Of a DNA stretch of 64,000 nucleotides, positions 658-60,439 are shown piece by piece. The position numbers were made by a program, and so were the translations under genes. The stretch comes from Macrostomum lignano (taxonomy: Eukaryota). Position 1 is the stretch's first letter; every line of letters starts with the position of its first letter. Where the stretch lies: positions 124,001 to 188,000 of the forward strand of contig NIVC01001747.1 in assembly GCA_002269645.1 (NCBI GenBank), written 5' to 3'. The notes under the pieces were generated by a model that was not told where the DNA came from, did not search any database, and was given only the letters and a program-made list of their open reading frames with translations.

Positions 658-769
658 CTGCTGAACAAGTCGATGTTAAAGAAAACGTACTCTCCATTGA
701 TGAAGCCCAGCTCTTGAGCTTTGATCATGATCTCGCGAACAGTGTCCGGGTCCGCGCAGAGAACCACGA
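658..769 (-). CDS. Putative first constant exon of a natriuretic peptide receptor / receptor guanylyl cyclase-like gene (ANF_receptor ectodomain)
   Basis: Minus strand: C-rich acceptor ...ccaccccttcAG|TC, then VVLCADPDTVREIMIKAQELGFINGEYVFFNIDLFS, then AG|GTGAGT donor. 112 nt, phase 1 in, phase 2 out. Matches the NPR/rGC motif VVI(L/M)CA...+R.IM..A..LG...GEY.FF.I.LF. Too short for the supplied ORF track. Confidence 0.92.
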
Positions 770-4830: not shown

Positions 4831-5264
4831 ACCCACCAAATCCCGTCAAAATATTTTTTGCACCCTATGGGGACACAGAAAGCAAATAAAAATCAATCGC
4901 CAAACTAAAAAGCACTCCTTTATTTTCAGCTCTCCCATCTGCCCTGCCCTTCACCAGAGTTTCGCCGCCTCAATCGCTCAGGTAACCAGTTCAGCCTAAC
5001 TTGCTTGCCGCTAATGAAGGTTTCACTCCTGCCGACTGAAAGCTGATCGATAACACACACCAGTTACATATCCATCAGCACTTATGCTGTGCTTAGTGAT
5101 ACACAGGCCGCTTTCGACTTTAGAGTATGTAGCCTTATAAATAGCTTCGTGTACTTTCAAAAACATTTGGTTATTGGCCTGTCTGTTTCGCAGCATTTTC
5201 TATTAATCAAAACATTATTTTATTCGTTTAGAATTTTCGATTTTTTGAAAATCTTTTATCTGAC

Positions 5265-5385
5265 GGTGTGGAATCTCTCCATCTGAAGGTGGGAATCTCT
5301 CAATCTGAAGGTGTGGAATCTCTCAATCTGAAGGTGTGGAATCTCTCCATCTGAAGGTGTGGAATCTCTCCATCTGAAGTTGTGG
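5265..5385 (+). repeat. ~23-bp tandem repeat (GTGTGGAATCTCTCCATCTGAAG), about 5 copies
   Basis: Direct reading, just inside the intron after cassette A. Confidence 0.9.
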
Positions 5386-5441
5386 ATATCTTTCTTTCTG
5401 CTCACTGCAGCCAGAAATGCTGACACCTCAAGCTGTCTTAC

Positions 5442-5864
5442 GCCGAATCTCATCGCGCATGACTCGAAAGATTTCGCTTTTAAACTGGGCATTGTGCATC
5501 TCGTACTGCAGCCTGCGCACAATGTACTTCTCCTGGACGAAGTGCTTCTCAATTCCGTGACACAAGATTCGACTCTGGGTGACCCCGATCTCATCTCTTG
5601 TGCGCTTCTCTTTCACGTCCTCGTCGGGCAGCTCGATGAACAGGATTGTCTGCACGTCCCTCGGCTTCCAGTTGAATCTCTGGAACACCAGGTAGAGCAT
5701 CTTCTCCACGCCGTCGAAACTGGGGCCGACTCGGATCAGATTGAAATATTCGGCTTTGTCGCGAAGTGCGCTGGCCACCCCGCCGGTGGTGAGTATCGGC
5801 CGTCGGTAGTGCGGCATCCGGTTGTAGCGGGCCACCGCTGCCAGGGCGAACGAGCAGTACGGGC
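5442..5864 (-). CDS. Variable cassette A, exon 2 (NPR/rGC ectodomain)
   Basis: Acceptor ccccAG|GC CCG TAC TGC completes G-PYCSFALAAVARYNRMPHYRRPILTTGG...YFNLIRVGPSF...FQRFNWK...ILCHG...MRDEIR. Ends C|GTAAGA (phase 1). 423 nt; overlaps track ORF 5428..5835. Confidence 0.9.
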
Positions 5865-7150: not shown

Positions 7151-7469
7151 CCAGCATGAGGTCAATCTTCTGCTGCAGAAGCAGCACTCCAAGCACCGGT
7201 GCCACAGAATAGTCGCATTTGCTGTCGTTGGCAATGAGACTGACAGAGTGGCCGTGAAGTAAGTCCAAGGTTGTCACTGTCTCGATGGCGATATCGACCA
7301 CAGGCAGCACCTGCTCCAAACTCATGTGGGACACATTGTGCCGAGCCCTTGGCAGCAGAACTGAGAACTTCAATTGTCTGTCAGACGTTGTCTGTGCCGA
7401 CTTTGTCAGCAGAGCAGTCAGCAGGAGCAGCGACAGCAGAGTCAAAGAGCGATACGAACAAGCAAGCAT
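7151..7469 (-). CDS. Variable cassette A, exon 1 (signal peptide + start of NPR/rGC ectodomain)
   Basis: ATG at 7469 (track ORF starts at an upstream GTG): MLACSYRSLTLLSLLLLTALLTKSAQT signal-like, then FSVLLP...SLEQVLPVVDIAIE...LLHGH...DSKCDYSVAP...IDLMLG. Donor G|GTGAGT, phase 1, splices in frame to 5864. Confidence 0.9.
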
Positions 7470-10200: not shown

Positions 10201-10679
10201 ATTTAATTGGCATGTCACTCGTCTAGTTTTATGACTCTCACCCAGCATCCATCAGTCTGACCTCTGCATGCATCAATTCCTTCCTTTATCTTTTTAGAAT
10301 ATCTTTTTTCCATTTATCAGAATAATATAATCAGAATAATTCTCTTTCAAGCAAAAGATTTTTTCTTGACTTAGCAATGAAGATCCTCTTTAGAAAAAAC
10401 TCTGACTTCTTAATCATGTTGAGCACGTTTCTCCTGAATCTTTTTCAGCCTCTCATTACACGGCCCTTTTGAACGAACTCCCCTCGGACCCTTAGAATCG
10501 ATATCTGCAAAAGATTTTAGTTTTATGTCACAAAGAAAGAAAGAAAAAGCCAACTGTGCATTTTTTGTTCATAAAGTACCAACTGAGGAAGATAATACTG
10601 CCCATTTCACGGAAAGCTCGTTTTGATCAGAGTCTTGAAATAAAATTTCGAATTTCATTTTGGTGTTACACTTTTCAAA

Positions 10680-11190
10680 CTATAGTGAATTATGTAAACT
10701 ACAGTGAATTATGTAAACTACAGTGAATTATGTAAACTACAGTAAATTCTGTAAACTACAGTGAATTATGTAAACTACAGTAAATTCTGTAAACTAAAGT
10801 AAATTCTGTAAACTACAGTAAATTCTGTAAACTACAGTAAATTCTATAAACTACAGTAAATTCTGTAAACTACAGTAAATTCTATAAACTACAGTAAATT
10901 CTGTAAACTACAGTAAATTCTGTAAACTACAGTAAATTCTATAAACTACAGTAAATTCTGTAAACTACAGTAAATTCTATAAACTACAGTAAATTCTGTA
11001 AACTACAGTAAGTTCTGTAAACTACAGTAAATTCTGTAAACTAGGGTAAATTCTGTAAACAACAGTAAATTCTGTAAACTACAGTAAATTCTATAAACTA
11101 CAGTAAATTCTGTAAACTACAGTAAATTCTATAAACTACAGTAAATTCTGTAAACTACAGTAAATTCTGTAAACTACAGTAAATTATTTA
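10680..11190 (+). repeat. 19-bp minisatellite (CTACAGTAAATTCTGTAAA)n
   Basis: Direct reading. Confidence 0.95.
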
Positions 11191-11383: not shown

Positions 11384-11739
11384 CAGAATAATCTGTGCCA
11401 ATTTTCTCGGTGAAAGCGGTGTGCAGGTCCTGATCAGAGAACCGGCCGCCGTAGGTGTCCATGAACTCAGCCTTCTTGCCCATGGCTTGCCATTCTTTGT
11501 TTAAATCCATCATTAGCAGGCTGCAGCCGTCCTTGGTATAGCCATAGTTCCACGAGTACAAGCCGAAGAACCTGCTCCAGTTGTTCGTGATGAAGATTCG
11601 CTTCAGAATCGAGCGCATCAATTCGCCGCTATCGAAGCTGACTCGGGCGAAAATCTTGTTTCTATATTTAATTTTTTCTGGATCGCGGAATGTCGACTCA
11701 ACTGAGCCGATGCTCACGACCGGCTTGTTCCAGATGGCA
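11384..11739 (-). CDS. Variable cassette B, exon 2 (NPR/rGC ectodomain)
   Basis: Acceptor ttctcccgcAG|T GCC ATC TGG AAC (phase 2): AIWNKPVVSIG...FRD...IFARVSF...ILKRIFITNNWSRFF...KDGCSLL...FTEKIGTDYS. Ends G|GTAAAA (phase 1). 356 nt; track ORF 11280..11798. Confidence 0.85.
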
Positions 11740-14657: not shown

Positions 14658-15695
<1,038 letters not shown>

Positions 15696-15721
15696 TAAAA
15701 AAGGTAGATAAACAGACTCAC

Positions 15722-16118
15722 TTGGAGTACTGCACCACCTGGCTGCAGCTCTCGGACACGGCAGGCCAACAAAGCCGTCAACCCAGCCAGAATAATAGTA
15801 CTGCATCGCAGGCACAGCTGCCAGGTTGGAGCAGGTGGACGCCTCAAAGCTGATGTTGATGCTGAACTGGTCTGCCAGGCCACGCCTCGTCAGCTCGGCG
15901 TTGATCAGGCTCTGGCTCGGCAGGATGTACCGCATGTCGAACTGATAATTAGACTGATTGGGCAGCAGACACAGCAGGCGGTATGGCAGCGGCTGATTCA
16001 ACGCTGCCATCGAGGCCTGACTCTGGACGGCCTGGCGCCCCAGGCTAATTACTATAATTAGTTGCCATGCAGTCACGATTGACAACCTGAGCCTGTTGTC
16101 TGCTTGTAGATCTAGCAT
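15722..16118 (-). CDS. Variable cassette B, exon 1 (signal peptide + start of ectodomain); apparent 1-nt frameshift near the 3' end
   Basis: ATG 16118: hydrophobic leader, then LLCLLP...FDMRYILP...INISFEASTCSNLAAVPAM...VDGFVGLPCPRAAA. Strong donor AA|GTGAGT at 15722/15721 fits exon 2 only in the shifted frame (QVVQYSN). An in-frame weak donor AG|GTGGTG lies at 15739. Confidence 0.8.
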
Positions 16119-21430: not shown

Positions 21431-21469
21431 ATCATTTAGGGCTTGTGCACGAAAATTGGCCTCTCTTCT

Positions 21470-24400
<2,931 letters not shown>

Positions 24401-24959: not shown

Positions 24960-27900
24960 GGAGACAGAGAGACAGGGAGACAGGGAGACAGGGAGACAGG
25001 GAGACAGGGAGACAGGCAGACAGGGAGACAGGCAGACAGGCAGACAGGGAGACAGGGAGACAAGGAGACAGGGAGACAGGGAGACAGGAAGACAGGCAGA
25101 CAGGGAGACAGCCAGACAGGCAGAAAGAGAGACAGCAAGACAGGGAGACAGGGAGACAGGGAGACAGGCAGACAGGGAGACACGGAGACAGGGAGACAGG
25201 CAGACAGGGAGACAGGCAGACAGGGAGTCACGGAGACAGGGAGACAGGCAGACAGGGAGTCACGGAGACAGGGAGACAGGCAGACAGGGAGACACGGGAA
25301 CAGGGAGACAGGCAGACAGGGAGACAGGCAGACAGGGAGTCACGGAGACAGGGAGACAGGCAGACAGGGAGACAGCCAGACAGGGAGACAGGGAGAGAGG
25401 GAGACAGGGAGAGAGGGAGACAGGGAGACAGGGAGACAGGCAGACAGGGAGACAGGGAGACAGGCAGACAGGGAGACATGGAGACAGGGAGAGAGAGAGA
25501 GACAGGCAGACAGGGAGACAGGGAAATAGGGAGACAGGCAGACAGGCAGACAGGCAGACAGGCAGACAGAGAGACAGCCAGACAGGGAGACAGGGAGACA
25601 GGGAGACACGGAGACAGGGAGACAGGCAGACAGGGAGACAGGCAGACAGGGAGACACGGAGACAGGGAGACAGGCAGACAGGGAGACACGGAGACAGGGA
25701 GACAGGCAGACAGGGAGACAGGGAGACAGGGAGTCACGGAGACAGGGAGCCAGGCAGACAGGGAGACAGGCAGACAGGGAGTCACGGAGACAGGGAGACA
25801 GGCAGACAGGGAGTCAAGGAGACAGGGAGACAGGCAGACAGGGAGACACGGAGACAGGGAGACAGGCAGACAGGGAGACAGGCAGACAGGGAGTCACGGA
25901 GACAGGGAGACAGGCAGACAGGGAGACAGCCAGACAGGGAGACAGGGAGAGAGGGAGACAGGGAGAGAGGGAGACAGGGAGACAGGGAGACAGGCAGACA
26001 GGGAGACAGGGAGACAGGCAGACAGGGAGACATGGAGACAGGGAGAGAGAGAGAGACAGGCAGACAGGGAGACAGGGAAATAGGGAGACAGGCAGACAGG
26101 CAGACAGGCAGACAGGCAGACAGAGAGACAGCCAGACAGGGAGACAGGGAGACAGGGAGACACGGAGACAGGGAGACAGGCAGACAGGGAGACAGGCAGA
26201 CAGGGAGACACGGAGACAGGGAGACAGGCAGACAGGGAGACACGGAGACAGGGAGACAGGCAGACAGGGAGACAGGCAGACAGGGAGACATGGAGACAGG
26301 GAGAGAGAGAGAGACAGGCAGACAGGGAGACAGGGAAATAGGGAGACAGGCAGACAGGCAGACAGGCAGACAGGCAGACAGAGAGACAGCCAGACAGGGA
26401 GACAGGGAGACAGGGAGACACGGAGACAGGGAGACAGGCAGACAGGGAGACAGGCAGACAGGGAGACACGGAGACAGGGAGACAGGCAGACAGGGAGACA
26501 CGGAGACAGGGAGACAGGCAGACAGGGAGACAGGGAGACAGGGAGTCACGGAGACAGGGAGCCAGGCAGACAGGGAGACAGGCAGACAGGGAGTCACGGA
26601 GACAGGGAGACAGGCAGACAGGGAGTCAAGGAGACAGGGAGACAGGCAGACAGGGAGACACGGAGACAGGGAGACAGGCAGACAGGGAGACAGGCAGACA
26701 GGGAGTCACGGAGACAGGGAGACAGGCAGACAGGGAGACAGCCAGACAGGGAGACAGGGAGAGAGGGAGACAGGGAGAGAGGGAGACAGGGAGACAGGGA
26801 GACAGGCAGACAGGGAGACAGGGAGACAGGCAGACAGGGAGACATGGAGACAGGGAGAGAGAGAGAGACAGGCAGACAGGGAGACAGGGAAATAGGGAGA
26901 CAGGCAGACAGGCAGACAGGGAGACAGGCAGACAGGCAGACAGAGAGACAGCCAGACAGGGAGACAGGGAGACAGGGAGACAGGGAGACAGGGAGACAGG
27001 CAGACAGGGAGACAGGCAGACAGGGAGACAGGCAGACAGGGAGACAGGCAGACAGGGAGACACGGAGACAGGGAGACAGGCAGACAGGGAGACAGGGAGA
27101 CAGGGAGTCACGGAGACAGGGAGCCAGGCAGACAGGGAGACAGGCAGACAGGGAGTCACGGAGACAGGGAGACAGGCAGACAGGGAGTCACGGAGACAGG
27201 GAGACAGGCAGACAGGGAGACACGGAGACAGGGAGACAGGCAGACAGGGAGACAGGCAGACAGGGAGTCACGGAGACAGGGAGACAGGCAGACAGGGAGA
27301 CAGCCAGACAGGGAGACAGGGAGAGAGGGAGACAGGGAGAGAGGGAGACAGGCAGACAGGGAGACAGGGAGACAGGGAGACAGGCAGACAGGGAGACAGG
27401 GAGACAGGCAGACAGGGAGACATGGAGACAGGGAGAGAGAGAGAGACAGGCAGACAGGGAGACAGGGAAATAGGGAGACAGGCAGACAGGCAGACAGGCA
27501 GACAGGCAGACAGAGAGACAGCCAGACAGGGAGACAGGGAGACAGGGAGACACGGAGACAGGGAGACAGGCAGACAGGGAGACAGGCAGACAGGGAGACA
27601 GGCAGACAGGGAGACAGGCAGACAGGGAGACACGGAGACAGGGAGACAGGCAGACAGGGAGACAGGCAGACAGGGAGACAGGGAGACAGGGAGTCACGGA
27701 GACAGGGAGCCAGGCAGACAGGGAGACAGGCAGACAGGGAGTCACGGAGACAGGGAGACAGGCAGACAGGGAGTCACGGAGACAGGGAGACAGGCAGACA
27801 GGGAGACACGGAGACAGGGAGACAGGCAGACAGGGAGACAGGCAGACAGGGAGTCACGGAGACAGGGAGACAGGCAGACAGGGAGACAGCCAGACAGGGA

Positions 27901-30470
27901 GACAGGGAGAGAGGGAGACAGGGAGAGAGGGAGACAGGGAGACAGGGAGACAGGCAGACAGGGAGACAGGGAGACAGGCAGACAGGGAGACATGGAGACA
28001 GGGAGAGAGAGAGAGACAGGCAGACAGGGAGACAGGGAAATAGGGAGACAGGCAGACAGGCAGACAGGCAGACAGGCAGACAGAGAGACAGCCAGACAGG
28101 GAGACAGGGAGACAGGGAGACACGGAGACAGGGAGACAGGCAGACAGGGAGACAGGCAGACAGGGAGACACGGAGACAGGGAGACAGGCAGACAGGGAGA
28201 CACGGAGACAGGGAGACAGGCAGACAGGGAGACAGGGAGACAGGGAGTCACGGAGACAGGGAGCCAGGCAGACAGGGAGACAGGCAGACAGGGAGTCACG
28301 GAGACAGGGAGACAGGCAGACAGGGAGACAGGCAGACAGGGAGACACGGAGACAGGGAGACAGGCAGACAGGGAGACACGGAGACAGGGAGACAGGGAGA
28401 CAGGGAGACAGGGAGACACGGAGACAGGGAGACAGGGAGACAGGGAGACAGGCAGACAGGGAGACAAGGAGACAGGGAGACAGGCAGACAGGCAGACAGG
28501 GAGACAGGCAGACAGGGAGACAGGCAGACAGGGAGACAGGCAGACAGGGAGACACGGAGACAAGGAGACAGGCAGACACGGAGACAGGGAGACAGGGAGA
28601 CAGGGAGACAGGGAGACAGGGAGACACGGAGACAGGGAGACAGGGAGACAGGGAGACAGGGAGACAGGGAGACAGGGAGACAGGCAGACAGGGAGACAGG
28701 CAGACAGGCAGACAGGGAGACAGGGAGACAGGCAGACAGGGAGACATGGAGACAGGGAGACAGGCAGACAGGGAGACAGGCAGACAGGGAGTCACGGAGA
28801 CAGGGAGACAGGCAGACAGGGAGACAGGCAGACAGGGAGACACGGAGACAGGGAGACAGGCAGACAGGGAGACACGGAGACAGGGAGACAGGGAGACAGG
28901 GAGACAGGGAGACACGGAGACAGGGAGACAGGGAGACAGGGAGACAGGCAGACAGGGAGACAAGGAGACAGGGAGACAGGCAGACAGGCAGACTGGGAGA
29001 CAGGCAGACAGGGAGACAGGCAGACAGGGAGACAGGCAGACAGGGAGACACGGAGACAAGGAGACAGGCAGACACGGAGACAGGGAGACAGGGAGACAGG
29101 GAGACAGGGAGACAGGGAGACACGGAAACAGGGAGACAGGGAGACAGGCAGACAGGGAGACAGGGAGACAGGGAGACAGGGAGACAGGCAGACAGGGAGA
29201 CAGGCAGACAGGCAGACAGGGAGACAGGGAGACAGGCAGACAGGGAGACATGGAGACAGGGAGACAGGCAGACAGGGAGTCAGGGAGACAAGGAGACAGG
29301 GAGACAGGGAGACAGGGAGACAGGCAGACAGGCAGACAGAGAGACAGCCAGACAGGGAGACAGGGAGACAGGGAGACAGGCAGACAGGCAGACAGGCAGA
29401 CAGGGAGACAGCCAGACAGGGAGACAGGGAGACAGCCAGACAGGGAGACAGGGAGACAGGAAGACAGGGAGACAGGCAGACAGGGAGACAGGGAGACAGG
29501 CAGACAGGGAGACAGGCAGACAGGGAGACACGGAGACAGGGAGAGAGAGAGAGACAGGCAGACAGGGAGACAGGGAAATAGGGAGACAGGACGACAGGCA
29601 GACAGGGAGACAGGCAGACAGGGAGACAGGGAGACAGGGAGACACGGAGACAGGGAGACAGCCAGACAGGGAGACAGGGAGACAGGGAGACACGGAGACA
29701 GGGAGACAGGCAGACAGGGAGACAGGCAGACAGGGAGACACGGAGACAGGGAGACAGGCAGACAGGGAGACACGGAGACAGGGAGACAGGCAGACAGGGA
29801 GACAGGCAGACAGGGAGACACGGAGACAGGGAGACACGGAGACAGGGAGACAGGCAGACAGGGAGACAGCCAGACAGGGAGACACGGAGACAGGGAGACA
29901 GGCAGACAGGGAGACAGGCAGACAGGGAGACACGGAGACAGGGAGACAGGCAGACAGGGAGACACGGAGACAAGGAGACAGGCAGACATGGAGACAGGGA
30001 GACAGGGAGACAGGGAGACACGGAGACAAGGAGACAGGCAGACAGGGAGACAAGGAGACAGAGAGACAGGCAGACAGGGAGACAGGGAGACAGGGAGAGA
30101 AGGGAGACAGGCAGACAGGGAGACAGGCAGACAGGGAGACACGGAGACAAGGAGACAGGCAGACACGGAGACAGGGAGACAGGGAGACAGGGAGACAGGC
30201 AGACAGGGAGACACGGAGACAGGGAGACAGGTAGACAGGGAGACACGGAGACAGGCAGACAGGGAGACACGGAGACAGGGAGACAGGCAGACAGGGAGAC
30301 AGGGAGACACGGAGACAGGCAGACAGGCAGACAGGGAGACACGGAGGCAGGGAGACAGGCAGACAGGGAGACACGGAGACAAGGAGACAGGCAGACAGGG
30401 AGACATGGAGACAGAGAGACAGGGAGACAGGGAGACAGGGAGACAGGGAGACAGGGAGAGAAGGGAGATT
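24960..30470 (+). repeat. GAGACAGG/GCAGACAG satellite, about 5.5 kb, with ~0.55-kb higher-order blocks
   Basis: Marker gggaaatagg at 25521, 26075, 26333, 26887, 27465, 28035 and 29573. Confidence 0.95.
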
Positions 30471-31689
30471 TGTAACCTTAAATCCTAGGTAAGCCCCAAT
30501 AAGGTTACCGGTAACATTAAGCTAGGACACTGCTAACATGATAATTCTACAATCAGAAACGCGAACTCAACAACAGGCGCACCCCAGCAGTTGCCTTAAA
30601 AGGAGCTGCTAACGAGAATTATGAAGACTCTTGTCAGAGCTTTGCGCGAAACACTGAGAGGGCCGGTGGGGCGGTGTGACTGAGAGCAAAGAGCCAAGCA
30701 GATTATAACAAAGATACAGGGCAGACTGTTGTCGCCAGCCGCTCCCAGCCAAGAAAACTTGCTTAGCCTTACAGCATGAAGCCTCAAAGGACTGTAACTG
30801 ACTAACTGACTTGATCAGCTTTCAACAGCTTTTTTGATACAGTTTCTGTGAAAAAGCAGACTCTGTACATAAAAGTACATATTAGGGCCACCTGCCATGT
30901 TGCCAAATTTCATTAGTAAAATTGTTATCTGATACTAATTTATATCATTAGTGAAAACAAATATTAAAGTAAAATCTCTTTTAGTAAAATTAAACAAAAC
31001 TAAAGTGAATCGATAGAATCGTTCGAAAGGTCGCGAGCTCGAGTCCCGATTGAGACTAATAATCTTTTCCGAGTTACAAAGACACCCCAAAAAGGTGGCA
31101 GAAACTGTCAAGTTTTATTCCCAGTAACACACTTTTAGTATTGTTTGAAATTTACCTCATCACTTACTTGAAATTTAGTAGAATTTTTACCGTACGATAT
31201 GTATCGAAAAGACGCTTCCGTAATGGGAAAAAAGTATGCGTAGACATTATATCTAGCTAGTGAATAACCAAGGAGCGTCCTAATTGTGACCGCAGTTACA
31301 TCTAAATGCTTTCACGGCTCTTCTTAATGTACTCATCGATTTTTTTATTCAAAATCCCAAAGGAATTCCAAATTTTTTTGGCTGGAACTTCTTCTGTCCT
31401 GGTGCCTCGATAATTAGGGCGCACGCACTCGGGCCGGGTCTGCAGGAGTTTCCTCAGCGCCCCGAATCCGCTCAACCGCAACGGCTTTTTTCAAGGTTCT
31501 CCGAAGCCTCTCCAGCGATTTTAAGTCCATCAGTGGGACAGAGAAATCTCCCATCTTTTTTTAATATCCACTACCGCCTCCATTATATTCCATGAGCGGT
31601 GCTTCTTCTAGGTAGGAGAAATTTCTATTTCATATAATTTACCCGCTCGAGTGAATAGAAGTACAGAATAGAAAGTCAAATCAGATTAC

Positions 31690-34600
31690 CCAAGATAGAT
31701 ATACTCAAGATAGAATTATCCAAGATAGAATCACCCAAGATAGAATCATCTAAGATAGCATCACCCATAATAGAATCACCCAAGATAGAATCACCCAAGA
31801 TAGAATCATCTAAGATAGCATCACCCAAAATATAATCATCTAAGACAGAATCACCACAGATAGAATCACCAGAGATAGAATCACCAGAGATAGAATCACC
31901 CAAGATAGAATCACCCATAATAGAATCACCCAAGATAGAATCACCCAAGATAGCATCACCCATAATAGAATCACCCAAGATAGAATCACCCAAGATAGAA
32001 TCATCTAAGATAGCATCACCCAAAATATAATCATCTAAGACAGAATCACCACAGATAGAATCACCACAGATAGAATCACCAGAGATAGAATCACCCAAGA
32101 TAGAATCACCCATAATAGAATCACCCAAGATAGAATCACCCAAGATAGCATCACCCAAGATAGAATCATCTAAGATAGCATCACCCAAAATATAATCATC
32201 TAAGACAGAATCACCACAGATAGAATCACCACAGATAGAATCACCAGAGATAGAATCACCCAAGATAGAATCACCCATAATAGAATCACCCAAGATAGAA
32301 TCACCCAAGATAGCATCACCCATAATAGAATCACCCAAGATAGAATCACCCAAGATAGAATCACCCAAGATAGAATCACCCATAATAGAATCACCCAAGA
32401 TAGAATCACCCATAATAGAATCACCCAAGATAGAATCACCCAAGATAGGATCACCCAAAATAGGATCACCCAAGATAGAATCGCCCAAGATAGAATCACC
32501 CAAAATAGAATCACCCAAGATAGAATCACCCAAGATAGAATCATCTAAGATAGCATCACCCATAATAGAATCACCCAAGATAGAATCATCCAAGATAGGA
32601 TCACCCAAGATAGAATCACCCAAGATAGAATCACCCAAGATAGAATCACCCATAATAGAATCACCCAAGATAGGATCACCCAAGATAGAATCATCTAAGA
32701 TAGCATCACCCAAAATATAATCATCTAAGACAGAATCACGACAGATAGAATCACCACAGATGAATCACCAGAGATAGAATCACCCAAGATAGAATCACCC
32801 ATAATAGAATCACCCAAGATAGGATCACCCAAGATAGAATCATCTAAGATAGCATCACCTAAAATATAATCATCTAAGACAGAATCACCACAGATAGAAT
32901 CACCACAGATAGAATCACCAGAGATAGAATCACTCAAAATAGCATCACCCATAATAGAATCACCCAAGATAGAATCACCCAAGATAGAATCACCCAAGAT
33001 AGCATCACCCAAGATAGAATCACCCAAGATAGAATCACCCAAGATAGAATCACCCAAGATAGAATCATCTAAGATAGCATCACCCAAGATGGAATCATCT
33101 AAGATAGCATCACCCAAAATATAATCATCTAAGACAGAATCACCACAGATAGAATCACCACAGATAGAATCACCACAGATAGAATCACCCATAATAGAAT
33201 CACCCAAGATAGAATCACCCAAGATAGAATCACCCAAGATAGAATCACCCAAGATAGAATCACCCAAGATAGAATCACCCAAGATAGAATCACCCAAGAT
33301 AGAATCATCTAAGATAGCATCACCCAAGATAGAATCATCTAAGATAGAATCACCCAAAATATAATCATCTAAGACAGAATCACCACAGATAGAATCACCA
33401 CAGATAGAATCACCACAGATAGAATCACCCAAGATAGAATCACCCACAATAGAATTACCCAAGATAGAATCACCCAAGATAGAATCACCCAAGATAGAAT
33501 CACCCATAATAGAAACACCCAAGATAGAATCATCTAAGATAGCATCACCCAAAATATAATCATCTAAGACAGAATCACCACAGATAGAATCACCACAGAT
33601 AGAATTACCACAGATAGAATCACCCAAAATAGAATCACCCAAGATAGAATCACTCAAGATAGAATCACCCATAATAGAACAACCCAAGATAGAATCACCC
33701 AAGATAGGATCACCCAAGATAGGATCACCCAAGATAGAATCACCCAAGATAGAATCACCCAAGATAGAATCACCCAAGATAGAATCACCCAAGATAGCAT
33801 CACCCAAGATAGTATCACCCAAGATAGAATCACCCAAGATAGAATCACCCAAGATAGAATCATCTAAGATAGCATCACCCAAGATGGAATCATCTAAGAT
33901 AGCATCACCCAAAAAATAATCATCTAAGACAGAATCACCACAGATAGAATCACCACAGATAGAATCACCAGAGATAGAATCACCCAAGATAGCATCACCC
34001 ATAATAGAATCACCCAAGATAGAATCACCCAAGATAGAATCACCCAAGATAGAATCACCCAAGATAGAATCACCCAAGATAGAATCATCTAAGATAGCAT
34101 CACCCAAGATAGAATCATCTAAGATAGCATCACCTAAAATATAATCATCTAATTCAGAATCACCACAGATAGAATCACCACAGATAGAATCACCACAGAT
34201 AGAATCACCCAAGATAGAATCACCCATAATAGAATCACCCAAGATAGAATCACCCAAGATAGAATCACCCAAGATAGAATTACCCATAATAGAATCACCC
34301 AAGATAGAATCACCCAAGATAGAATCACCCAAGATAGAATCACCCAAGATAGAATCACCCAAGATAGAATCATCTAAGATAGCATCACCCAAAATATAAT
34401 CATCTAAGACAGAATCACCACAGATAGAATCACCAGAGATAGAATCACCAGAGATAGAATCACCCAAGATAGAATCACCCATAATAGAATCACCCAAGAT
34501 AGAATCACCCAAGATAGCATCACCCATAATGAAATCACCCAAGATAGAATCACCCAAGATAGAATCATCTAAGATAGCATCACCCAAAATATAATCATCT

Positions 34601-37600
34601 AAGATAGAATCACCACAGATAGAATCACCACAGATAGAATCACCAGAGATAGAATCACCCAAGATAGAATCACCCATAATAGAATCACCCAAGATAGAAT
34701 CACCCAAGATAGCATCACCCATAATAGAATCACCCAAGATAGCATCACCCAAGATAGAATCATCTAAGATAGCATCACCCAAAATATAATCATCTAAGAC
34801 AGAATCACCACAGATAGATTCACCACAGATAGAATCACCAGAGATAGAATCACCCAAGATAGAATCACCCATAATAGAATCACCCAAGATAGAATCACCC
34901 AAGATAGCATCACCCATAATAGAATCACCCAAGATAGAATCACCCAAGATAGAATCACCCAAGATAGAATCACCCATAATAGAATCACCCAAGATAGAAT
35001 CACCCATAATAGAATCACCCAAGATAGGATCACCCAAGATAGGATCACCCAAGATAGAATCGCCCAAGATAGAATCACCCAAAATAGAATCACCCAAGAT
35101 AGAATCACCCAAGATAGAATCATCTAAGATAGCATCACCCATAATAGAATCACCCAAGATAGAATCATCCAAGATAGGATCACCCAAGATAGAATCACCC
35201 AAGATAGAATCACCCAAGATAGAATCACCCATAACAGAATCACCCAAGATAGGATCACCCAAGATAGAATCATCTAAGATAGCATCACCCAAAATATAAT
35301 CATCTAAGACAGAATCACCACAGATAGAATCACCACAGATGAATAACCAGAGATAGAATCACCCAAGATAGAATCACCCATAATAGAATCACCCAAGATA
35401 GGATCACCCAAGATAGAATCATCTAAGATAGCATCACCTAAAATATAATCATCTAATTCAGAATCACCACAGATAGAATCACCACAGATAGAATCACCAG
35501 AGATAGAATCACTCAAAATAGCATCACCCATAATAGAATCACCCAAGATAGAATCACCCAAGATAGAATCACCCAAGATAGCATCACCCAAGATAGAATC
35601 ACCCAAGATAGAATCACCCAAGATAGAATCACCCAAGATAGAATCATCTAAGATAGCATCACCCAAGATGGAATCATCTAAGATAGCATCACCCAAAATA
35701 TAATCATCTAAGACAGAATCACCACAGATAGAATCACCACAGATAGAATCACCAGAGATAGAATCACCCAAGATAGCATCACCCATAATAGAATCACCCA
35801 AGATAGAATCACCCAAGATAGAATCACCCAAGATAGAATCACCCAAGATAGAATCACCCAAGATAGGATCACCCAAGATAGAATCACCCAAGATAGAATC
35901 ACCCAAGATAGAATCATCTAAGATAGCATCACCCAAGATAGAATCATCTAAGATAGAATCACCCAAAATATAATCATCTAAGACAGAATCACCACAGATA
36001 GAATCACCACAGATAGAATCACCCATAATAGAATTACCCAAGATAGAATCACCCAAGATAGAATCACCCAAGATAGAATCATCTAAGATAGCATCACCCA
36101 AGATGGAATCATCTAAGATAGCATCACCCAAAATATAATCATCTAAGACAGAATCACCACAGATAGAATCACCACAGATAGAATTACCACAGATAGAATC
36201 ACCCAAGATAGAATCACCCAAGATAGAATCACTCAAGATAGAATCACCCATAATAGAACAACCCAAGATAGAATCACCCAAAATAGATCACCCAAGATAG
36301 ATCACCCAAGATAGAATCACCCAAGATAGAATCACCCAAGATAGAATCACCCAAGATAGAATCACCCATAATAGAATCACCCAAGATAGGATCACCCAAG
36401 ATAGAATCATCTAAGATAGCATCACCCAAAATATAATCATCTAAGACAGAATCACCACAGATAGAATCACCACAGATAGAATCACCAGAGATAGAATCAC
36501 CCAAGATAGCATCACCCATAATAGAATCACCCAAGATAGAATCACCCAAGATAGAATCACCCAAGATAGAATCACCCAAGATAGAATCACCCAAGATAGA
36601 ATCATCTAAGATAGCATCACCCAAGATAGAATCATCTAAGATAGCATCACCCAAAATATAATCATCTAAGACAGAATCACCACAGATAGAATCACCCAAG
36701 ATAGAATCACCACAGATAGAATCACCCAAGATAGAATCACCCAAGATAGAATCACCCAAGATAGAATTACCCATAATAGAATCACCCAAGATAGAATCAC
36801 CCAAGATAGAATACCCATAATAGAATCACCCAAGATAGAATCACCCAAGATAGAATCACCCAAGATAGCATCACCCAAGATAGAATCACCCAAGATAGCA
36901 TCACCCAAGATAGAATCACCCAAGATAGAATCACCCAAGATAGAATCACCCAAGATAGAATCATCTAAGATAGCATCACCCAAGATGGAATCATCTAAGA
37001 TAGCATCACCCAAAATATAATCATCTAAGACAGAATCACCACAGATAGAATCACCACAGATAGAATCACCACAGATAGAATCACCCATAATAGAATCACC
37101 CAAGATAGAATCACCCAAGATAGAATCACCCAAGATAGAATCACCCAAGATAGAATCACCCAAGATAGAATCACCCAAGATAGAATCACCCAAGATAGAA
37201 TCATCTAAGATAGCATCACCCAAGATAGAATCATCTAAGATAGAATCACCCAAAATATAATCATCTAAGACAGAATCACCACAGATAGAATCACCACAGA
37301 TAGAATCACCACAGATAGAATCACCCAAGATAGAATCACCCATAATAGAATTACCCAAGATAGAATCACCCAAGATAGAATCACCCAAGATAGAATCACC
37401 CATAATAGAAACACCCAAGATAGAATCATCTAAGATAGCATCACCCAAAATATAATCATCTAAGACAGAATCACCACAGATAGAATCACCACAGATAGAA
37501 TTACCACAGATAGAATCACCCAAGATAGAATCACCCAAGATAGAATCACTCAAGATAGAATCACCCATAATAGAACAACCCAAGATAGAATCACCCAAGA

Positions 37601-40600
37601 TAGATCACCCAAGATAGATCACCCAAGATAGAATCACCCAAGATAGAATCACCCAAGATAGAATCACCCAAGATAGAATCACCCAAGATAGATCACCCAA
37701 GATAGTATCACCCAAGATAGAATCACCCAAGATAGAATCACCCAAGATAGAATCATCTAAGATAGCATCACCCAAGATGGAATCATCTAAGATAGCATCA
37801 CCCAAAATATAATCATCTAAGACAGAATCACCACAGATAGAATCACCACAGATAGAATCACCAGAGATAGAATCACCCAAGATAGCATCACCCATAATAG
37901 AATCACCCAAGATAGAATCACCCAAGATAGAATCACCCAAGATAGAATCACCCAAGATAGAATCATCTAAGATAGCATCACCCAAGATAGAATCATCTAA
38001 GATAGCATCACCCAAAATATAATCATCTAATTCAGAATCACCACAGATAGAATCACCACAGATAGAATCACCACAGATAGAATCACCCAAGATAGAATCA
38101 CCCATAATAGAATCACCCAAGATAGAATCACCCAAGATAGAATCACCCAAGATAGAATTACCCATAATAGAATCACCCAAGATAGAATCACCCAAGATAG
38201 AATCACCCAAGATAGAATCACCCAAGATAGAATCACCCAAGATAGAATCATCTAAGATAGCATCACCCAAAATATAATCATCTAAGACAGAATCACCACA
38301 GATAGAATCACCAGAGATAGAATCACCAGAGATAGAATCACCCAAGATAGAATCACCCATAATAGAATCACCCAAGATAGAATCACCCAAGATAGCATCA
38401 CCCATAATGAATCACCCAAGATAGAATCACCCAAGATAGAATCATCTAAGATAGCATCACCCAAAATATAATCATCTAAGATAGAATCACCACAGATAGA
38501 ATCACCACAGATAGAATCACCAGAGATAGAATCACCCAAGATAGAATCACCCATAATAGAATCACCCAAGATAGAATCACCCAAGATAGCATCACCCATA
38601 ATAGAATCACCCAAGATAGCATCACCCAAGATAGAATCATCTAAGATAGCATCACCCAAAATATAATCATCTAAGACAGAATCACCACAGATAGATTCAC
38701 CACAGATAGAATCACCAGAGATAGAATCACCCAAGATAGAATCACCCATAATAGAATCACCCAAGATAGAATCACCCAAGATAGCATCACCCATAATAGA
38801 ATCACCCAAGATAGAATCACCCAAGATAGAATCACCCAAGATAGAATCACCCATAATAGAATCACCCAAGATAGAATCACCCATAATAGAATCACCCAAG
38901 ATAGAATCACCCAAGATAGGATCACCCAAGATAGATCACCCAAGATAGAATCGCCCAAGATAGAATCACCCAAAATAGAATCACCCAAGATAGAATCACC
39001 CAAGATAGAATCATCTAAGATAGCATCACCCATAATAGAATCACCCAAGATAGAATCATCCAAGATAGGATCACCCAAGATAGAATCACCCAAGATAGAA
39101 TCACCCAAGATAGAATCACCCATAACAGAATCACCCAAGATAGGATCACCCAAGATAGAATCATCTAAGATAGCATCACCCAAAATATAATCATCTAAGA
39201 CAGAATCACCACAGATAGAATCACCACAGATGAATAACCAGAGATAGAATCACCCAAGATAGAATCACCCATAATAGAATCACCCAAGATAGGATCACCC
39301 AAGATAGAATCATCTAAGATAGCATCACCTAAAATATAATCATCTAATTCAGAATCACCACAGATAGAATCACCACAGATAGAATCACCAGAGATAGAAT
39401 CACTCAAATAGCATCACCCATAATAGAATCACCCAAGATAGAATCACCCAAGATAGAATCACCCAAGATAGCATCACCCAAGATAGAATCACCCAAGATA
39501 GAATCACCCAAGATAGAATCACCCAAGATAGAATCATCTAAGATAGCATCACCCAAGATGGAATCATCTAAGATAGCATCACCCAAAATATAATCATCTA
39601 AGACAGAATCACCACAGATAGAATCACCACAGATAGAATCACCAGAGATAGAATCACCCAAGATAGCATCACCCATAATAGAATCACCCAAGATAGAATC
39701 ACCCAAGATAGAATCACCCAAGATAGAATCACCCAAGATAGAATCACCCAAGATAGGATCACCCAAGATAGAATCACCCAAGATAGAATCACCCAAGATA
39801 GAATCATCTAAGATAGCATCACCCAAGATAGAATCATCTAAGATAGAATCACCCAAAATATAATCATCTAAGACAGAATCACCACAGATAGAATCACCAC
39901 AGATAGAATCACCCATAATAGAATTACCCAAGATAGAATCACCCAAGATAGAATCACCCAAGATAGAATCATCTAAGATAGCATCACCCAAGATGGAATC
40001 ATCTAAGATAGCATCACCCAAAATATAATCATCTAAGACAGAATCACCACAGATAGAATCACCACAGATAGAATTACCACAGATAGAATCACCCAAGATA
40101 GAATCACCCAAGATAGAATCACTCAAGATAGAATCACCCATAATAGAACAACCCAAGATAGAATCACCCAAATAGGATCACCCAAGATAGGATCACCCAA
40201 GATAGAATCACCCAAGATAGAATCACCCAAGATAGAATCACCCAAGATAGAATCACCCATAATAGAATCACCCAAGATAGATCACCCAAGATAGAATCAT
40301 CTAAGATAGCATCACCCAAAATATAATCATCTAAGACAGAATCACCACAGATAGAATCACCACAGATAGAATCACCAGAGATAGAATCACCCAAGATAGC
40401 ATCACCCATAATAGAATCACCCAAGATAGAATCACCCAAGATAGAATCACCCAAGATAGAATCACCCAAGATAGAATCACCCAAGATAGAATCATCTAAG
40501 ATAGCATCACCCAAGATAGAATCATCTAAGATAGCATCACCCAAAATATAATCATCTAAGACAGAATCACCACAGATAGAATCACCCAAGATAGAATCAC

Positions 40601-45540: not shown

Positions 45541-45959
45541 AGATTTACCTGTTTCAAATTGACCGTTGATGTATTTCGCATTTTAGTCTTTACTGTTTAT
45601 TTGTAATTCCTGACTCTATATTTTTCCATTTTTAGTTGCACGATAACAATTGGAAAGGACAAAATGAAAGCTCAGTATTTTACCTAATTTGTTTTTACAC
45701 AAGGCAGACAAACAGACAGGCGCAAAGCTCCAAAGCTTTAGCAATTTTATTTAAAATTGAAAAGATAAAATCACTGTGCATATCGCCTTTGTTCTTCAGA
45801 TTTTAAGTTCAGATAATATGACTCATGGCTGGATTATAATGAAAAGATGGGTTTAAAATTCGAGTGCAAATTTGAAAGCAAACAATTGAGTCTTGCTGCT
45901 TCAGTGAAAGTACTTTAATTTATAGGCTGAATTTATGCCATCATTTTATTTATGATCTT

Positions 45960-52590: not shown

Positions 52591-53548
52591 AGGCACGCAC
52601 GCATAGACACGCTCACACGGGTGCACAGCGGCTCCTGACTTTCTAATCGTCCGGCATGTACACTTTCTGTGCCATGGGGGTTCACCCAAGGGTGTGCGTG
52701 GGAATCGCACGACAACCCACTTGGTCGATTTTCGAGTGCACCGAAATCCCAGTGCACCCAAAGGGTCACCCACCGACCATGCGTTCTTTTATCAAATTGT
52801 CCATACGAAAATTAAATCATAAATTGTTAATGACAACCTTCACATGCCTCTCTTCCACGTAGCTATATATTTTTTATCTTCACCGGGTTATAGCTTTAGC
52901 CGCAAACGGTACGCCATTTAAATCGAATCTACTAATCAAATCATATCGAGCTCTCGTTGACTGCCAAACCCCGTTCAAAATTACCGATTAAGCTGTCAAG
53001 AATGACTTCAAACACACGCGAGGCTAGCTACACAGCTCACCCTCTACCCTCCATGCCCTCCCCCCCAGGGGTAACCCAGCCAGGAGACATGCTGTCTACT
53101 TCTCCCTTCCTGTGACTGACCCACGTCTTGGCCTGGCAGAAAAATCCCCGCGTCTCTCCGCGGGCAATTGAAGATAAAAGGGCATTTTGGTAATCGCACT
53201 AAGCATACAAGAATGATATTTCTTGCATGTTGCCTCAACTACTAAAACTACATGTTAGCTACGGCCGCTTTTGAGACGCCAATAGCTGGATGTGAAATAC
53301 AGAATTAGAAACGAGTTGATTGACTGACTGATTGATTGATTAATCGGTTACACATAGGGAGAAAAGGGCGCCCCGCCCAGAAAATTGATCCTTTGTCATT
53401 TCAAATAATTTTATCATTTTCTTTTGACCATCGCATGCATGTCAGTGTCGATTAGTGCTTATTTGATAGAAATTATTAATAATCTTTTTATTAGAGATTT
53501 GTCTCCTAGGACAATTCTTTGACGGCAAAAATACTTCTGCAAATTCAA

Positions 53549-55962: not shown

Positions 55963-56731
55963 CAGCCAGTTTATTCCCAACTCTTTCCAGCAGGATCTTC
56001 CGGTACAGCTCGTCCGTAATGTTTAGCTTCAAGTCTTCATCAATTTGAGAATCCAGCGTCATTGACTCGTACATGTAGGACATGTTTTGCTTGAAATTGA
56101 ATTCAAAGACTTTCTCTACGAACTGGCATTGGAACAGGTCTAGGAAGTAGCTGGGTCTGCCGTCAGTAGCCACGACACTTTTTCGTCGATTGATGAAGAA
56201 TAGCCGCTTCCAGCCTCCCAGATTGGTCATGACTGACTGCATTGTGTCGAAGATGCCTTTGCCCGTGGTGCCAACCCTGATCAAGTCGTACCTGTCGAGG
56301 CTGCCAGACAGGGCACCGGTGGAGATGAAAGTGTCGATGCTGTGCTTGTAGTACAGAAACACATTGTTGATGGAGTATGAGCACAGCAAGCCAGTGATGA
56401 GGCGCGGCTGCACTCCAGTTGAGGACTCGTGCTGCTTGCACTTCAGGGCCATCAGCTCCCTGATTGAAGCCACGTGTTCGCAAGGGAAGTCTTCCGGCTG
56501 CTTGACCAGCTGGATTGAGTGGCCGAGAGCTTGAAGAACAGTGGGATGCTGCATTGCAACATCGAATGTAGCCTGCAGCAGTTCAAGCGGACTGACCACT
56601 TGGTGACCAACTGAGTTGTACTTTGTCGCCAACAGCAGGACCGTGATGTTCTTCTTTGTTGAAGCGGTGACAGCAGCGGACAGACACAGGCACAGAAGCA
56701 AGATTGCTGCGGCGCTTTTAGAAGCAAGCAT
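55963..56731 (-). CDS. Variable cassette C, single exon (signal peptide + N-terminal ~256 aa of NPR/rGC ectodomain)
   Basis: ATG 56731 MLASKSAAAILLLCLCLSAAVTAS signal peptide; ITVLLL, FPCE, GLLCSYS, FISTGA, YDLIRVG, GGWKRLFFI, FQC, ILLERVGNKLA. Ends G|GTGAGT (phase 1). 769 nt; track ORF 55904..56731. Confidence 0.88.
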
Positions 56732-59940: not shown

Positions 59941-59944
59941 TCAC

Positions 59945-60363
59945 AGGCCTTCCCAGTGCCAACTTTCCTGGTCAGCACATCCTCCCAGCTCAGCGAGCCA
60001 GCCAACTCGAACACGCAGTCGATGCCGTACAGGGCACCGGATATCCTGGTGCACCAGTTCATGAGCGCCTGGCCCAAGCCTCTCAAACTGGGGATGTCAT
60101 CTGACGGCTGGTAGGCCACCTCTCTGAACACAAAGGTCACCCGGCGCCAGCTGTTGTCCCGCATGAACACTCGAATGATGTCTGGCAGCACCTCCATTCG
60201 AAACGGGGTCACCCGGATCATTCTGGTGCCCTGTCTGTCGTGAAAGACGTCTCGCACGGCTCCCGGCGTGACTTCCGGTATCCGATTGTGAAATGTGAAC
60301 GGGATGAACTGCGTGATTGCGTAATCAGTCACCGGTCCGAAAAATGCGTGAATGCAGAGCTGC
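59945..60363 (-). CDS. Variable cassette D, terminal exon (NPR/rGC ectodomain); upstream exon not located in window
   Basis: Acceptor ttctcccatccgcAG|G CAG (phase 2): QLCIHAFFGPVTDYAITQFIPFTFHNRIPEVTPGA...FHD...MIRVTP...NSWRRVTFVF...LSWEDVLTRKVGTGKA. Ends T|GTGAGT (phase 1). 419 nt. Confidence 0.87.
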
Positions 60364-60439
60364 CTGCGGATGGGAGAATTTGGGAATTGATGTTTTTGTT
60401 TTTAACTAATTCACCTTTTCGGATTCTGAAATCGGTAGA

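What the first reader, a model, noticed from the sequence alone, without database searches (positions are those of the whole stretch)
658..769. The single constant exon completes every cassette in frame with a hydrophobic residue
Seen: the exon begins TC after the acceptor. Joined to each donor's last base it gives C+TC=Leu (A), G+TC=Val (B, C) and T+TC=Phe (D), all hydrophobic, opening the conserved beta-strand xVVLC. This exon is near-canonical NPR/rGC sequence, while the cassettes are barely alignable to one another. Inference: strong purifying selection on a shared exon and splice compatibility kept across four independent donors up to 59 kb away.
Basis: partly seen in the sequence, partly recalled or inferred. 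Interest (0 to 1): 0.75.

Follow-up and report, generated by a model that had tools for sequence, protein, structure and literature searches.

The report
Flatworm receptor gene with swappable front ends
A natriuretic-peptide-receptor-like guanylyl cyclase gene of the flatworm Macrostomum lignano carries four very different alternative "front halves" of its hormone-binding domain, lined up over 59 kb in front of one shared 112-base exon; this would let one gene make several receptors with different ligand-binding surfaces, but only two of the four joins have support so far.

Summary
On the minus strand, 769-658 is a 112-nt exon (cag|TC...AG|gtgagt) encoding VVLCADPDTVREIMIKAQELGFINGEYVFFNIDLFS. 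It is the only such exon in the window by tblastn and by an exon HMM. Four upstream cassettes (A 7469-5442, B 16118-11384, C 56731-55963, D 60363-59945) end in phase-1 GT donors and read through it as Leu, Val, Val and Phe.

The "hydrophobic" part carries no information, because every NTC codon is Phe, Leu, Ile or Val. The phase is inherited rather than kept independently: two gastropods have the same 112-nt exon starting cag|TC.

The window is Macrostomum lignano.
- A joined to the constant exon is the annotated 1109-aa guanylate cyclase (A0A1I8HYF3, 100% identical).
- C joined to the constant exon is seen exactly in a spliced RNA contig of a congener. There the cassette has dN 0.26-0.30 and dS about 1.5-1.8. 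The constant exon has 0 nonsynonymous and 14 synonymous changes.
- The B and D joins are unverified. However, a paralogous M. lignano locus also has A', B', C' and D' types.
- B exon 1 in this copy lacks one base. D's first exon lies outside the window.

Best reading: a variable-5'-cassette, constant-body receptor gene of the protocadherin/UGT1A type. Its odd feature is two-exon cassettes, and how they are skipped is unknown.

The parts
658..769 (-). First constant exon (112 nt, phase 1 at its 5' end). It encodes a strand (VVLC), a helix (PDTVREIMIKAQEL) and a strand (YVFF) of the ANF_receptor domain.
   Evidence: It is 100% identical to M. lignano models P0037, P0180 and P0181. The secondary structure comes from the model of P0001. 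The same 112-nt exon occurs in two gastropods.
7151..7469 (-). Cassette A exon 1: ATG at 7469, signal peptide, start of the ligand-binding domain. Donor G|gtgagt, phase 1.
   Evidence: Pfam positions 2-63. 100% identical to P0037 from the internal Met MSLEQ onward.
5442..5864 (-). Cassette A exon 2: acceptor ccccag| in phase 1, donor C|gtaaga in phase 1. Joins the constant exon as CTC Leu.
   Evidence: the spliced product scores 77.6 bits on ANF_receptor. The junction RDEIR-L-VVLCADPD is present in P0037, P0180 and P0181.
15722..16118 (-). Cassette B exon 1: ATG at 16118, signal peptide. The strong donor is CAA|gtgagt. This copy lacks one G at 15753/15752, which shifts the frame.
   Evidence: The intact reading GLPCPESCSQVVQYSN|AIW is seen in M. 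lignano P0036 and P0182.
11384..11739 (-). Cassette B exon 2: acceptor cccgcag| in phase 2, donor G|gtaaaa in phase 1. Would join the constant exon as GTC Val.
   Evidence: Pfam aligns the spliced product in one stretch, positions 18-213. 97-98% identical to P0036 and P0182.
55963..56731 (-). Cassette C: a single exon with ATG at 56731 and a signal peptide, 256 codons. Donor G|gtgagt in phase 1. Joins the constant exon as GTC Val.
   Evidence: The orthologous transcript L001/P0001 (66% aa, 70% nt) is joined exactly at this donor to the constant exon. dN/dS is about 0.16.
59945..60363 (-). Cassette D exon 2: acceptor tccgcag| in phase 2, donor T|gtgagt in phase 1. Would join the constant exon as TTC Phe. 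D exon 1 is not in the window.
   Evidence: Pfam aligns the product in one stretch, positions 52-213. 45-47% identical to the D' part of M. lignano P0039.

Best explanation
The window holds the 5' part of a Macrostomum lignano receptor guanylyl cyclase gene of the natriuretic-peptide-receptor (GC-A/NPR-A, gcy-28-like) type. It is built as a set of variable 5' cassettes in front of a constant body.

Four cassettes lie in the order D, C, B, A on the minus strand. Start codons and signal peptides are seen for A, B and C. Each cassette encodes roughly the first 245 residues of the extracellular ANF_receptor domain, up to an ancient phase-1 intron.

A transcript would start at one cassette. The cassette's last donor would then be spliced to the single 112-nt exon at 769-658. 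That exon is followed, outside the window, by the rest of the ligand-binding domain, the membrane span, the kinase-homology domain and the cyclase domain. The products would share all signalling parts and differ in half of the ligand-binding domain.

Shown: there is one constant exon; all donors fit its frame; the A join is in gene models; the C join is in a spliced RNA of a related species; cassette C and the constant exon are under purifying selection; all four cassette types exist at a second locus.

Inferred: B and D are used in this way; each cassette has its own promoter; only one cassette is used per transcript. How a transcript that starts at C or D would skip the internal acceptors of B exon 2 and A exon 2 is not known.
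For: One constant exon only. A cassette HMM finds no cassette exons beyond the six listed.

All four final donors are phase 1 and read through the exon. Pfam aligns the B and D products across the junction in one stretch, and the A product scores 77.6 bits.

A join: P0037, P0180 and P0181 (UniProt A0A1I8HYF3, A0A1I8GF39, A0A1I8HCY1, M. lignano) are 100% identical to cassette A plus the constant exon. They continue into a full receptor cyclase. The best PDB match is NPR1, E=5e-266.

C join: contig L001 (Logan, SRR28338163) aligns to 56604-55967 and then directly to 773-658. It is RNA-derived, because its 3' end runs into an unspliced intron, CAG|GTGAGTAA.

Selection: cassette C has dN 0.26-0.30 and dS 1.5-1.8. 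The constant exon has dN 0 and dS 1.17.

Paralogous M. lignano locus: P0038 is A' plus constant'. P0039 is D' followed by A'. P0099 is C' followed by B'. That locus is older than the species split: the constant part is 62.5% identical to the paralogue but 92% identical to the congener.

Fold: a model of the C-type product (mean pLDDT 65, pTM 0.68) best matches the GC-A/NPR-A hormone-binding domain (TM 0.63-0.76, E about 1e-25).
Against: No junction-spanning RNA from M. lignano itself was available for any cassette. The A join rests on predicted gene models, and the C join on another species whose gene layout is unknown.

B exon 1 has a one-base frame defect in this copy. The two UniProt B models read through the B exon 2 donor into the intron rather than joining the constant exon.

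D exon 1, and so D's start codon, is not in the window.

A, B and D are two-exon cassettes. A transcript from C or D would meet the good acceptors of B exon 2 (phase 2, out of frame) and A exon 2 (phase 1, in frame) before the constant exon. No RNA pairing that could enforce skipping was found.

The 44 kb between C and B is mostly minisatellite, which is the kind of sequence where assemblies go wrong.
Confidence: 0.65

Rival explanations
1. Only some cassettes are in use. A, and probably C, are working alternative 5' ends. B and/or D at this locus are decaying leftovers of old duplications, or give only unproductive transcripts.
For: B exon 1 is frameshifted in this copy. The B models in UniProt end in the intron. 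D has no first exon in the window. No transcript with a B-type or D-type front end joined to a constant exon turned up in any search.
Against: The open frames are otherwise intact, with good GT and AG sites. Two other M. lignano copies of B are in frame, so the missing base may be an assembly error or a defect of this one copy. B' and D' are kept at the older paralogous locus, at 67% and 47% identity. That retention is not expected for dead sequence, given that cassettes of different types share only 17-23% identity.
Confidence: 0.2
2. Assembly artefact. C and D belong to a neighbouring or homeologous gene copy whose own constant exons were lost, or wrongly joined, inside the long minisatellite arrays. 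The 55-59 kb 'introns' would then not exist.
For: About half of the window is tandem repeat, including a 13.9-kb array of a 15-mer and a 5.5-kb array of a 16-mer between C and B. M. lignano is described as a hidden polyploid (abstract of PMC10468722, seen). The UniProt proteome holds near-identical duplicate models.
Against: Gene models at the paralogous locus chain C' with B' and D' with A'. This matches the cassette order in the window, so the cassette types lie together at a second locus too. No trace of any other downstream receptor exon lies between C and B.
Confidence: 0.08
3. Cassettes are used in series rather than as alternatives. Transcripts would chain two or more cassettes, as the UniProt models P0039 (D' then A') and P0099 (C' then B') suggest, giving receptors with tandem partial domains.
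For: P0039 and P0099 exist as predicted proteins. A phase-1 donor of C, D or B joined to the phase-1 acceptor of A exon 2 would stay in frame.
Against: The only real RNA seen joins C directly to the constant exon. In P0039 and P0099 the second cassette is entered in the middle of its first exon, and P0099 then runs on past the point that matches the B exon 1 donor in the window; this looks like a gene-predictor artefact. A doubled half-domain does not fit the bilobed fold. Joining C or D to B exon 2 is out of frame.
Confidence: 0.04

Closest known systems
Variable-first-exon gene clusters (clustered protocadherins alpha and gamma; UGT1A). Stated from my own knowledge of these loci.
   Same: A tandem array of homologous but divergent 5' units lies on one strand. 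Each unit has its own start codon, and each is spliced to one shared set of constant exons. The variable part carries the recognition surface and the constant part carries the common function. As in UGT1A, the variable and constant parts are two halves of one working protein.
   Different: Three of the four units here have two exons with an internal acceptor, so 'first exon without an acceptor' does not explain how downstream units are skipped. The split falls in the middle of a single bilobed domain. There are only four units. Promoters, and one-unit-per-transcript use, are not shown.
Vertebrate natriuretic peptide receptors NPR-A/GC-A and NPR-C (PDB 1DP4, 1T34, 9DZH, 1JDP)
   Same: Same domain family and fold. 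P0037 matches full-length NPR1 at E=5e-266 and the NPR-A hormone-binding domain at E=1e-55. The model of the C-type product matches these structures best.
   Different: To my knowledge, vertebrate NPR ligand diversity comes from separate genes (NPR1, NPR2, NPR3), not from alternative front halves of one gene. Cassettes B, C and D are far from the canonical sequence. Cassette C alone is not recognised by Pfam, and in the C spliced product Pfam aligns only positions 161-213, the cassette's tail plus the constant exon.
C. elegans gcy-28
   Same: It is a receptor guanylyl cyclase of the same subfamily; mollusc orthologues of this gene are named 'gcy-28-like'. Its splice isoforms gcy-28.c and gcy-28.d are driven from different promoters, with broad expression versus AIA-restricted expression (PMC9249223; PMC3842693).
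   Different: I recall, but could not check, that these isoforms differ in N-terminal extracellular exons; the primary papers were not held. No array of four deeply divergent half-domain cassettes is described for it in the texts I could read.
Mutually exclusive cassette splicing with docking and selector RNA pairing (Drosophila Dscam1 type). Stated from my own knowledge.
   Same: One of several homologous alternatives ends up in the mature mRNA, next to a constant exon.
   Different: The cassettes here carry start codons and signal peptides, so they are 5' modules rather than internal exons. No complementarity above shuffled controls was found between the intron in front of the constant exon and the introns after the donors.

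Membership tests
Receptor guanylyl cyclase, NPR-A/GC-A (gcy-28-like) type | Extracellular ANF_receptor (type I periplasmic-binding-protein-like) ligand-binding domain | tested here: met
   Pfam PF01094 on the spliced products: A 77.6, B 53.9, D 40.0 and C 28.4 bits. The C-type orthologue P0001 scores 128 bits over positions 4-352. Foldseek's best hits are GC-A and NPR-C ectodomains.
Receptor guanylyl cyclase, NPR-A/GC-A (gcy-28-like) type | Single membrane span, kinase-homology domain and class III cyclase domain downstream | tested here: met
   These parts are not in the window. M. lignano P0037 is 100% identical to cassette A plus the constant exon. It continues for 1109 aa and matches full-length NPR1 at E=5e-266.
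Receptor guanylyl cyclase, NPR-A/GC-A (gcy-28-like) type | Orthologous exon structure at this point of the domain | tested here: met
   Gigantopelta (L003) and Littorina (L004) have a 112-nt exon that starts cag|TC GTG GT and ends AG|gt.
Variable-first-exon / constant-exon gene cluster (protocadherin, UGT1A type) | Several homologous variable units in tandem, on one strand, upstream of a single set of constant exons | tested here: met
   Four cassettes and one constant exon within 60 kb.
Variable-first-exon / constant-exon gene cluster (protocadherin, UGT1A type) | Each unit has its own start codon (and promoter) | tested here: inconclusive
   ATG plus signal peptide is found for A, B and C. 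D exon 1 is outside the window. Promoters cannot be tested with these tools.
Variable-first-exon / constant-exon gene cluster (protocadherin, UGT1A type) | Each unit is a single 5' exon with a donor but no acceptor, so downstream units are skipped automatically | tested here: not met
   Only C is a single exon. A, B and D have a second exon with a good acceptor.
Variable-first-exon / constant-exon gene cluster (protocadherin, UGT1A type) | Each unit is spliced directly to the first constant exon, one unit per mRNA | tested here: inconclusive
   A by gene models. C by a spliced RNA of a congener. There are no data for B or D. No M. lignano reads were available.
Mutually exclusive internal exons with docking/selector pairing (Dscam1 type) | Complementary intronic sequences pair a docking site near the constant exon with a selector after each alternative | tested here: not met
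   The longest exact complementary matches are 9-12 nt, no longer than in shuffled controls. This is a crude test: exact matches only.

The most novel reading that the evidence does not exclude
NPR-like receptor cyclases of Macrostomum, at two or more paralogous loci, diversify ligand recognition by choosing one of four ancient, deeply divergent N-terminal half-domains and splicing it to a common body. The choice among two-exon cassettes would need a still unknown mechanism that hides the internal acceptors of downstream cassettes over 5-59 kb of minisatellite-filled intron. The long intron in front of the same exon in molluscs leaves open that the layout is wider among spiralians.
Probability: 0.45. 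Interest if true: 0.65.

Novelty: new member of a known kind. Interest (0 to 1): 0.5.

Why it matters
If all four joins are used, one gene makes four receptors that share the cGMP-generating machinery but differ in half of the hormone-binding domain. That would be a compact way to widen ligand or tissue specificity. It has not been described for natriuretic-peptide-type receptors in the literature I could search.

It also matters for annotation. The M. lignano proteome currently has the A form without its signal peptide, B as a stray fragment, and chimeric models at the paralogue. Several mollusc models of the orthologue start inside the constant exon because their 5' parts lie more than 10 kb upstream.

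The two-exon cassettes pose a clear, testable splicing question in an organism that can be made transgenic.

Tried and rejected
1. Second copy of the constant exon. tblastn with relaxed settings and an exon HMM with all filters off found none.

2. Further cassettes. A cassette HMM against all six-frame ORFs found only the six known exons.

3. D exon 1. Three-frame reading of 60364-64000 and tblastn with the D' model P0039 found nothing.

4. Alternative donor for B exon 1. CAG|GTGGTG at 15739 restores the frame but shortens a conserved segment by 5-6 residues. I dropped it once P0036 and P0182 showed the intact reading.

5. The same species in the assembly index. An exact look-up of the C open frame found nothing. 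The UniProt models have no contigs on record.

6. Cassettes upstream of the mollusc exon. None lies within the 10-kb flank in Gigantopelta or Littorina.

7. Docking/selector RNA pairing. Nothing above shuffled controls.

8. Spliced-leader sequence. None in the window, and none at the 5' end of L001.

9. Other genes in the window. No Pfam hit in ten other ORFs apart from one weak chance match, and no Rfam family.

10. Primary papers on gcy-28 isoforms were not held. Two literature searches for alternative first exons in receptor cyclases found nothing relevant.

Full report
WHAT IS AT 658-769. Read on the minus strand, the stretch is a clean internal exon of 112 nt. A long pyrimidine tract and cag (772-770) precede TC GTG GTT CTC TGC ..., and the exon ends ...TTC AGC AG followed by gtgagt. 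It encodes (x)VVLCADPDTVREIMIKAQELGFINGEYVFFNIDLFS. Pfam places it at positions 176-213 of the 353-position ANF_receptor model (E=5.9e-6). In a structure model of a full-length relative, it forms a strand (VVLC), a helix and a second strand. The window ends 657 bases downstream, so the rest of the gene is not in view.

THE FOUR CASSETTES. Stop-to-stop ORFs, tblastn and a profile search find six upstream coding exons on the same strand.
- A exon 1 is 7469-7151 (ATG, signal peptide). A exon 2 is 5864-5442.
- B exon 1 is 16118-15722 (ATG, signal peptide). B exon 2 is 11739-11384.
- C is a single exon, 56731-55963 (ATG, signal peptide, 256 codons).
- D exon 2 is 60363-59945.

The last donor of each cassette is a GT in phase 1: C|gtaaga, G|gtaaaa, G|gtgagt and T|gtgagt. 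Joined to TC, these give Leu, Val, Val and Phe, and the reading frame then runs through the constant exon. Pfam aligns the B and D spliced products across the junction in a single stretch (positions 18-213 and 52-213). The A product scores 77.6 bits. In the C product Pfam aligns only positions 161-213, the cassette's tail plus the constant exon. The cassettes share only 17-23% identity with each other, which is no more than they share with mollusc orthologues.

IS THE CONSTANT EXON REALLY SINGLE? Yes, within this window. Relaxed tblastn gives one hit. An HMM of the exon, run with all filters off against every six-frame ORF of 12 residues or more, gives 87 bits for this exon and 6 bits for the next best ORF. 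No other downstream receptor exon lies anywhere in the window.

WHAT CARRIES NO INFORMATION. A codon with T in second place and C in third can only be Phe, Leu, Ile or Val. Once the exon starts with TC in phase 1, any donor gives a hydrophobic residue, so this part of the title is automatic. The shared phase is also not four independent achievements. In the gastropods Gigantopelta aegis and Littorina saxatilis, the homologous exon is likewise exactly 112 nt, begins cag|TC GTG GT and ends AG|gt. The intron in front of VVLC, with its phase, is at least as old as the common ancestor of flatworms and molluscs. Cassettes made by duplicating the upstream exons inherited it.

WHOSE GENE IS IT? A search with cassettes B and D returned a Macrostomum lignano protein 94% identical to B. 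An exhaustive HMMER search with the relative P0001, followed by cluster look-ups, then gave the key proteins.
- P0037, P0180 and P0181 (UniProt A0A1I8HYF3, A0A1I8GF39 and A0A1I8HCY1, 'Guanylate cyclase', 1071-1111 aa) are 100% identical to cassette A from an internal methionine onward. They carry the junction ...RDEIR-L-VVLCADPD... and the constant exon.
- They continue into the rest of the ectodomain, a membrane span, a kinase-homology domain and a cyclase domain.
- The best solved relative is full-length human NPR1/GC-A (E=5e-266). The ectodomain matches 1DP4 at E=1e-55.

The window is thus M. lignano, and the A form is the annotated gene. These models are missing the real start at 7469 and its signal peptide.

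EVIDENCE THAT C IS SPLICED TO THE SAME EXON. P0001 is a 489-residue ORF on a 1677-nt Logan contig (L001) from run SRR28338163. At the DNA level, L001 aligns to 56604-55967 (cassette C, 70% identity) and then without a gap to 773-658 (constant exon, 87%). The switch falls exactly at the C donor and the constant acceptor. The contig goes on through sequence that is split into several exons in molluscs. It ends by running into an unspliced intron, CAG|GTGAGTAA, so it is RNA-derived. It comes from a related species: its constant ectodomain part is 92% identical to P0037.

Between the two species, cassette C has dN 0.26-0.30 and dS about 1.5-1.8. The constant exon has 14 synonymous and no nonsynonymous changes. 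Both are under purifying selection, and the shared exon far more strongly. A structure model of this C-type product has mean pLDDT 65 and pTM 0.68, and is weak over residues 181-268. It best matches the GC-A and NPR-C hormone-binding domains (E about 1e-25, TM 0.63-0.76). Even the most divergent cassette therefore completes an NPR-type ectodomain.

B AND D. No transcript or model joins them to the constant exon. Two M. lignano models of B (P0036, P0182) read GLPCPESCSQVVQYSN|AIWNKP across the B intron and then run through the B exon 2 donor into the intron. Compared with them, the window lacks one G at 15753/15752. As a result, the strong donor CAA|gtgagt at 15722 is in phase 1, while the B exon 2 acceptor is in phase 2. 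With that base counted, the whole B product is in frame up to and through the constant exon. This may be an assembly error or a defect of this copy; the species has near-identical duplicate copies. For D, only the second exon is present. Its first exon must lie beyond position 64000.

A SECOND LOCUS WITH THE SAME FOUR TYPES. Three further M. lignano models belong to a paralogue whose constant exon is 92% identical to this one.
- P0038 is A' plus constant'.
- P0039 is D' (including a D' first exon) run into A'.
- P0099 is C' run into B' exon 1.

Identities to the window cassettes are A' 50%, B' 67%, C' 32% and D' 47%. Each is far higher than the identity between cassette types. The chained models are probably predictor artefacts. 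They still show that the cassette types lie together there, in pairs whose order matches the window. The paralogue's constant ectodomain part is 62.5% identical to this locus, against 92% for the congener. The four cassette types therefore predate a duplication that itself predates the species split. Long retention of all four types at two loci is the main argument that B and D are not junk.

HOW IT MOST LIKELY WORKS. The gene looks like a variable-5'-cassette, constant-body gene. Transcription would start at one cassette, and that cassette's final donor would be spliced to the exon at 769-658. All products would share everything from the VVLC strand onward. In outline this is the layout of the clustered protocadherins and UGT1A. 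It departs from them in one respect that matters mechanistically: A, B and D have two exons. A pre-mRNA that begins at C or D contains the acceptors of B exon 2 (phase 2, out of frame with a phase-1 donor) and of A exon 2 (phase 1, in frame) before it reaches the constant exon. Something must hide them. A crude search for docking/selector complementarity found nothing above shuffled controls. M. lignano trans-splices about 30% of its genes (PMC8629364), but there is no leader-like sequence in the window or on L001. This step is open.

RIVALS.
1. Only A and C are in use, and B and/or D are relics here.
2. C and D were joined to this locus by misassembly in the minisatellites that fill about half of the window, including 13.9 kb of a 15-mer.
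3. Cassettes are chained in series.

The paralogue evidence weighs against the first two, and the L001 junction against the third. None is excluded without M. lignano junction reads.

VERDICT. The organisation is a new member of a known kind of gene layout, in a receptor family where I found no description of it. C. elegans gcy-28, with its promoter-specific isoforms, is the nearest functional precedent. Nothing in this work called for a referred step.

Noticed in passing
window 15745-15758 (minus strand): B exon 1 reads TGTCCGAGAGC where two other M. lignano copies imply TGTCCGGAGAGC. This is a one-base deletion in a GG pair that breaks the frame between B exon 1 and B exon 2. It may be an assembly indel or a copy-specific defect.
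   Followed up: partly
window 3290-63378, e.g. 31688-45544, 24960-30468, 21461-24394, 53548-55883: About half of the window is minisatellite arrays with periods of 4-46 nt. They include a 13.9-kb array of a 15-mer. The introns between cassettes are largely made of them.
   Followed up: partly
window 59351-59944; also 53548-55883, 14658-15697, 10677-11185, 5260-5400: Every cassette donor is followed within about 7-200 nt by a tandem array. The 21-mer array after the D donor starts about 7 nt after it and repeats GTTTTACAGTGTGTCTAACAG, i.e. a branch-point-like CTAAC followed by AG|GT. Several arrays carry acceptor-like YYYCAG motifs. I did not test whether they act as splice decoys or recursive sites, or are just the genome's background.
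   Followed up: no
window 7326-7469: The three UniProt models of the A form start at the internal Met MSLEQ. The window has an upstream in-frame ATG at 7469 with a typical signal peptide (MLACSYRSLTLLSLLLLTALLT...), so the deposited models look N-terminally truncated.
   Followed up: partly
L003 10077-11343 (Gigantopelta aegis CM027794.1): Directly downstream of the orthologous exon lies a tandem array of about 79-nt units. Each unit still translates to a 24-residue piece of that exon (58-79% identical), so a satellite seems to have been seeded by part of a coding exon.
   Followed up: no
L003 and L004, 1-9958: In both gastropods no cassette-like exon lies within 10 kb upstream of the constant exon. 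The deposited proteins start at a Met inside that exon. Many annotated 'gcy-28-like' and 'NPR-like' proteins are such N-terminally missing fragments.
   Followed up: partly
P0039 and P0099 (M. lignano paralogous locus; no DNA held): Two deposited gene models chain two cassettes (D' into mid-A'; C' into B' exon 1). They are probably prediction artefacts, but they reveal that a second locus has the same four cassette types.
   Followed up: partly
L001 1610-1677: The congener RNA contig ends in an unspliced intron (CAG|GTGAGTAA), which gives the ORF a false stop just before the expected membrane span. It should not be read as a soluble receptor without more evidence.
   Followed up: no
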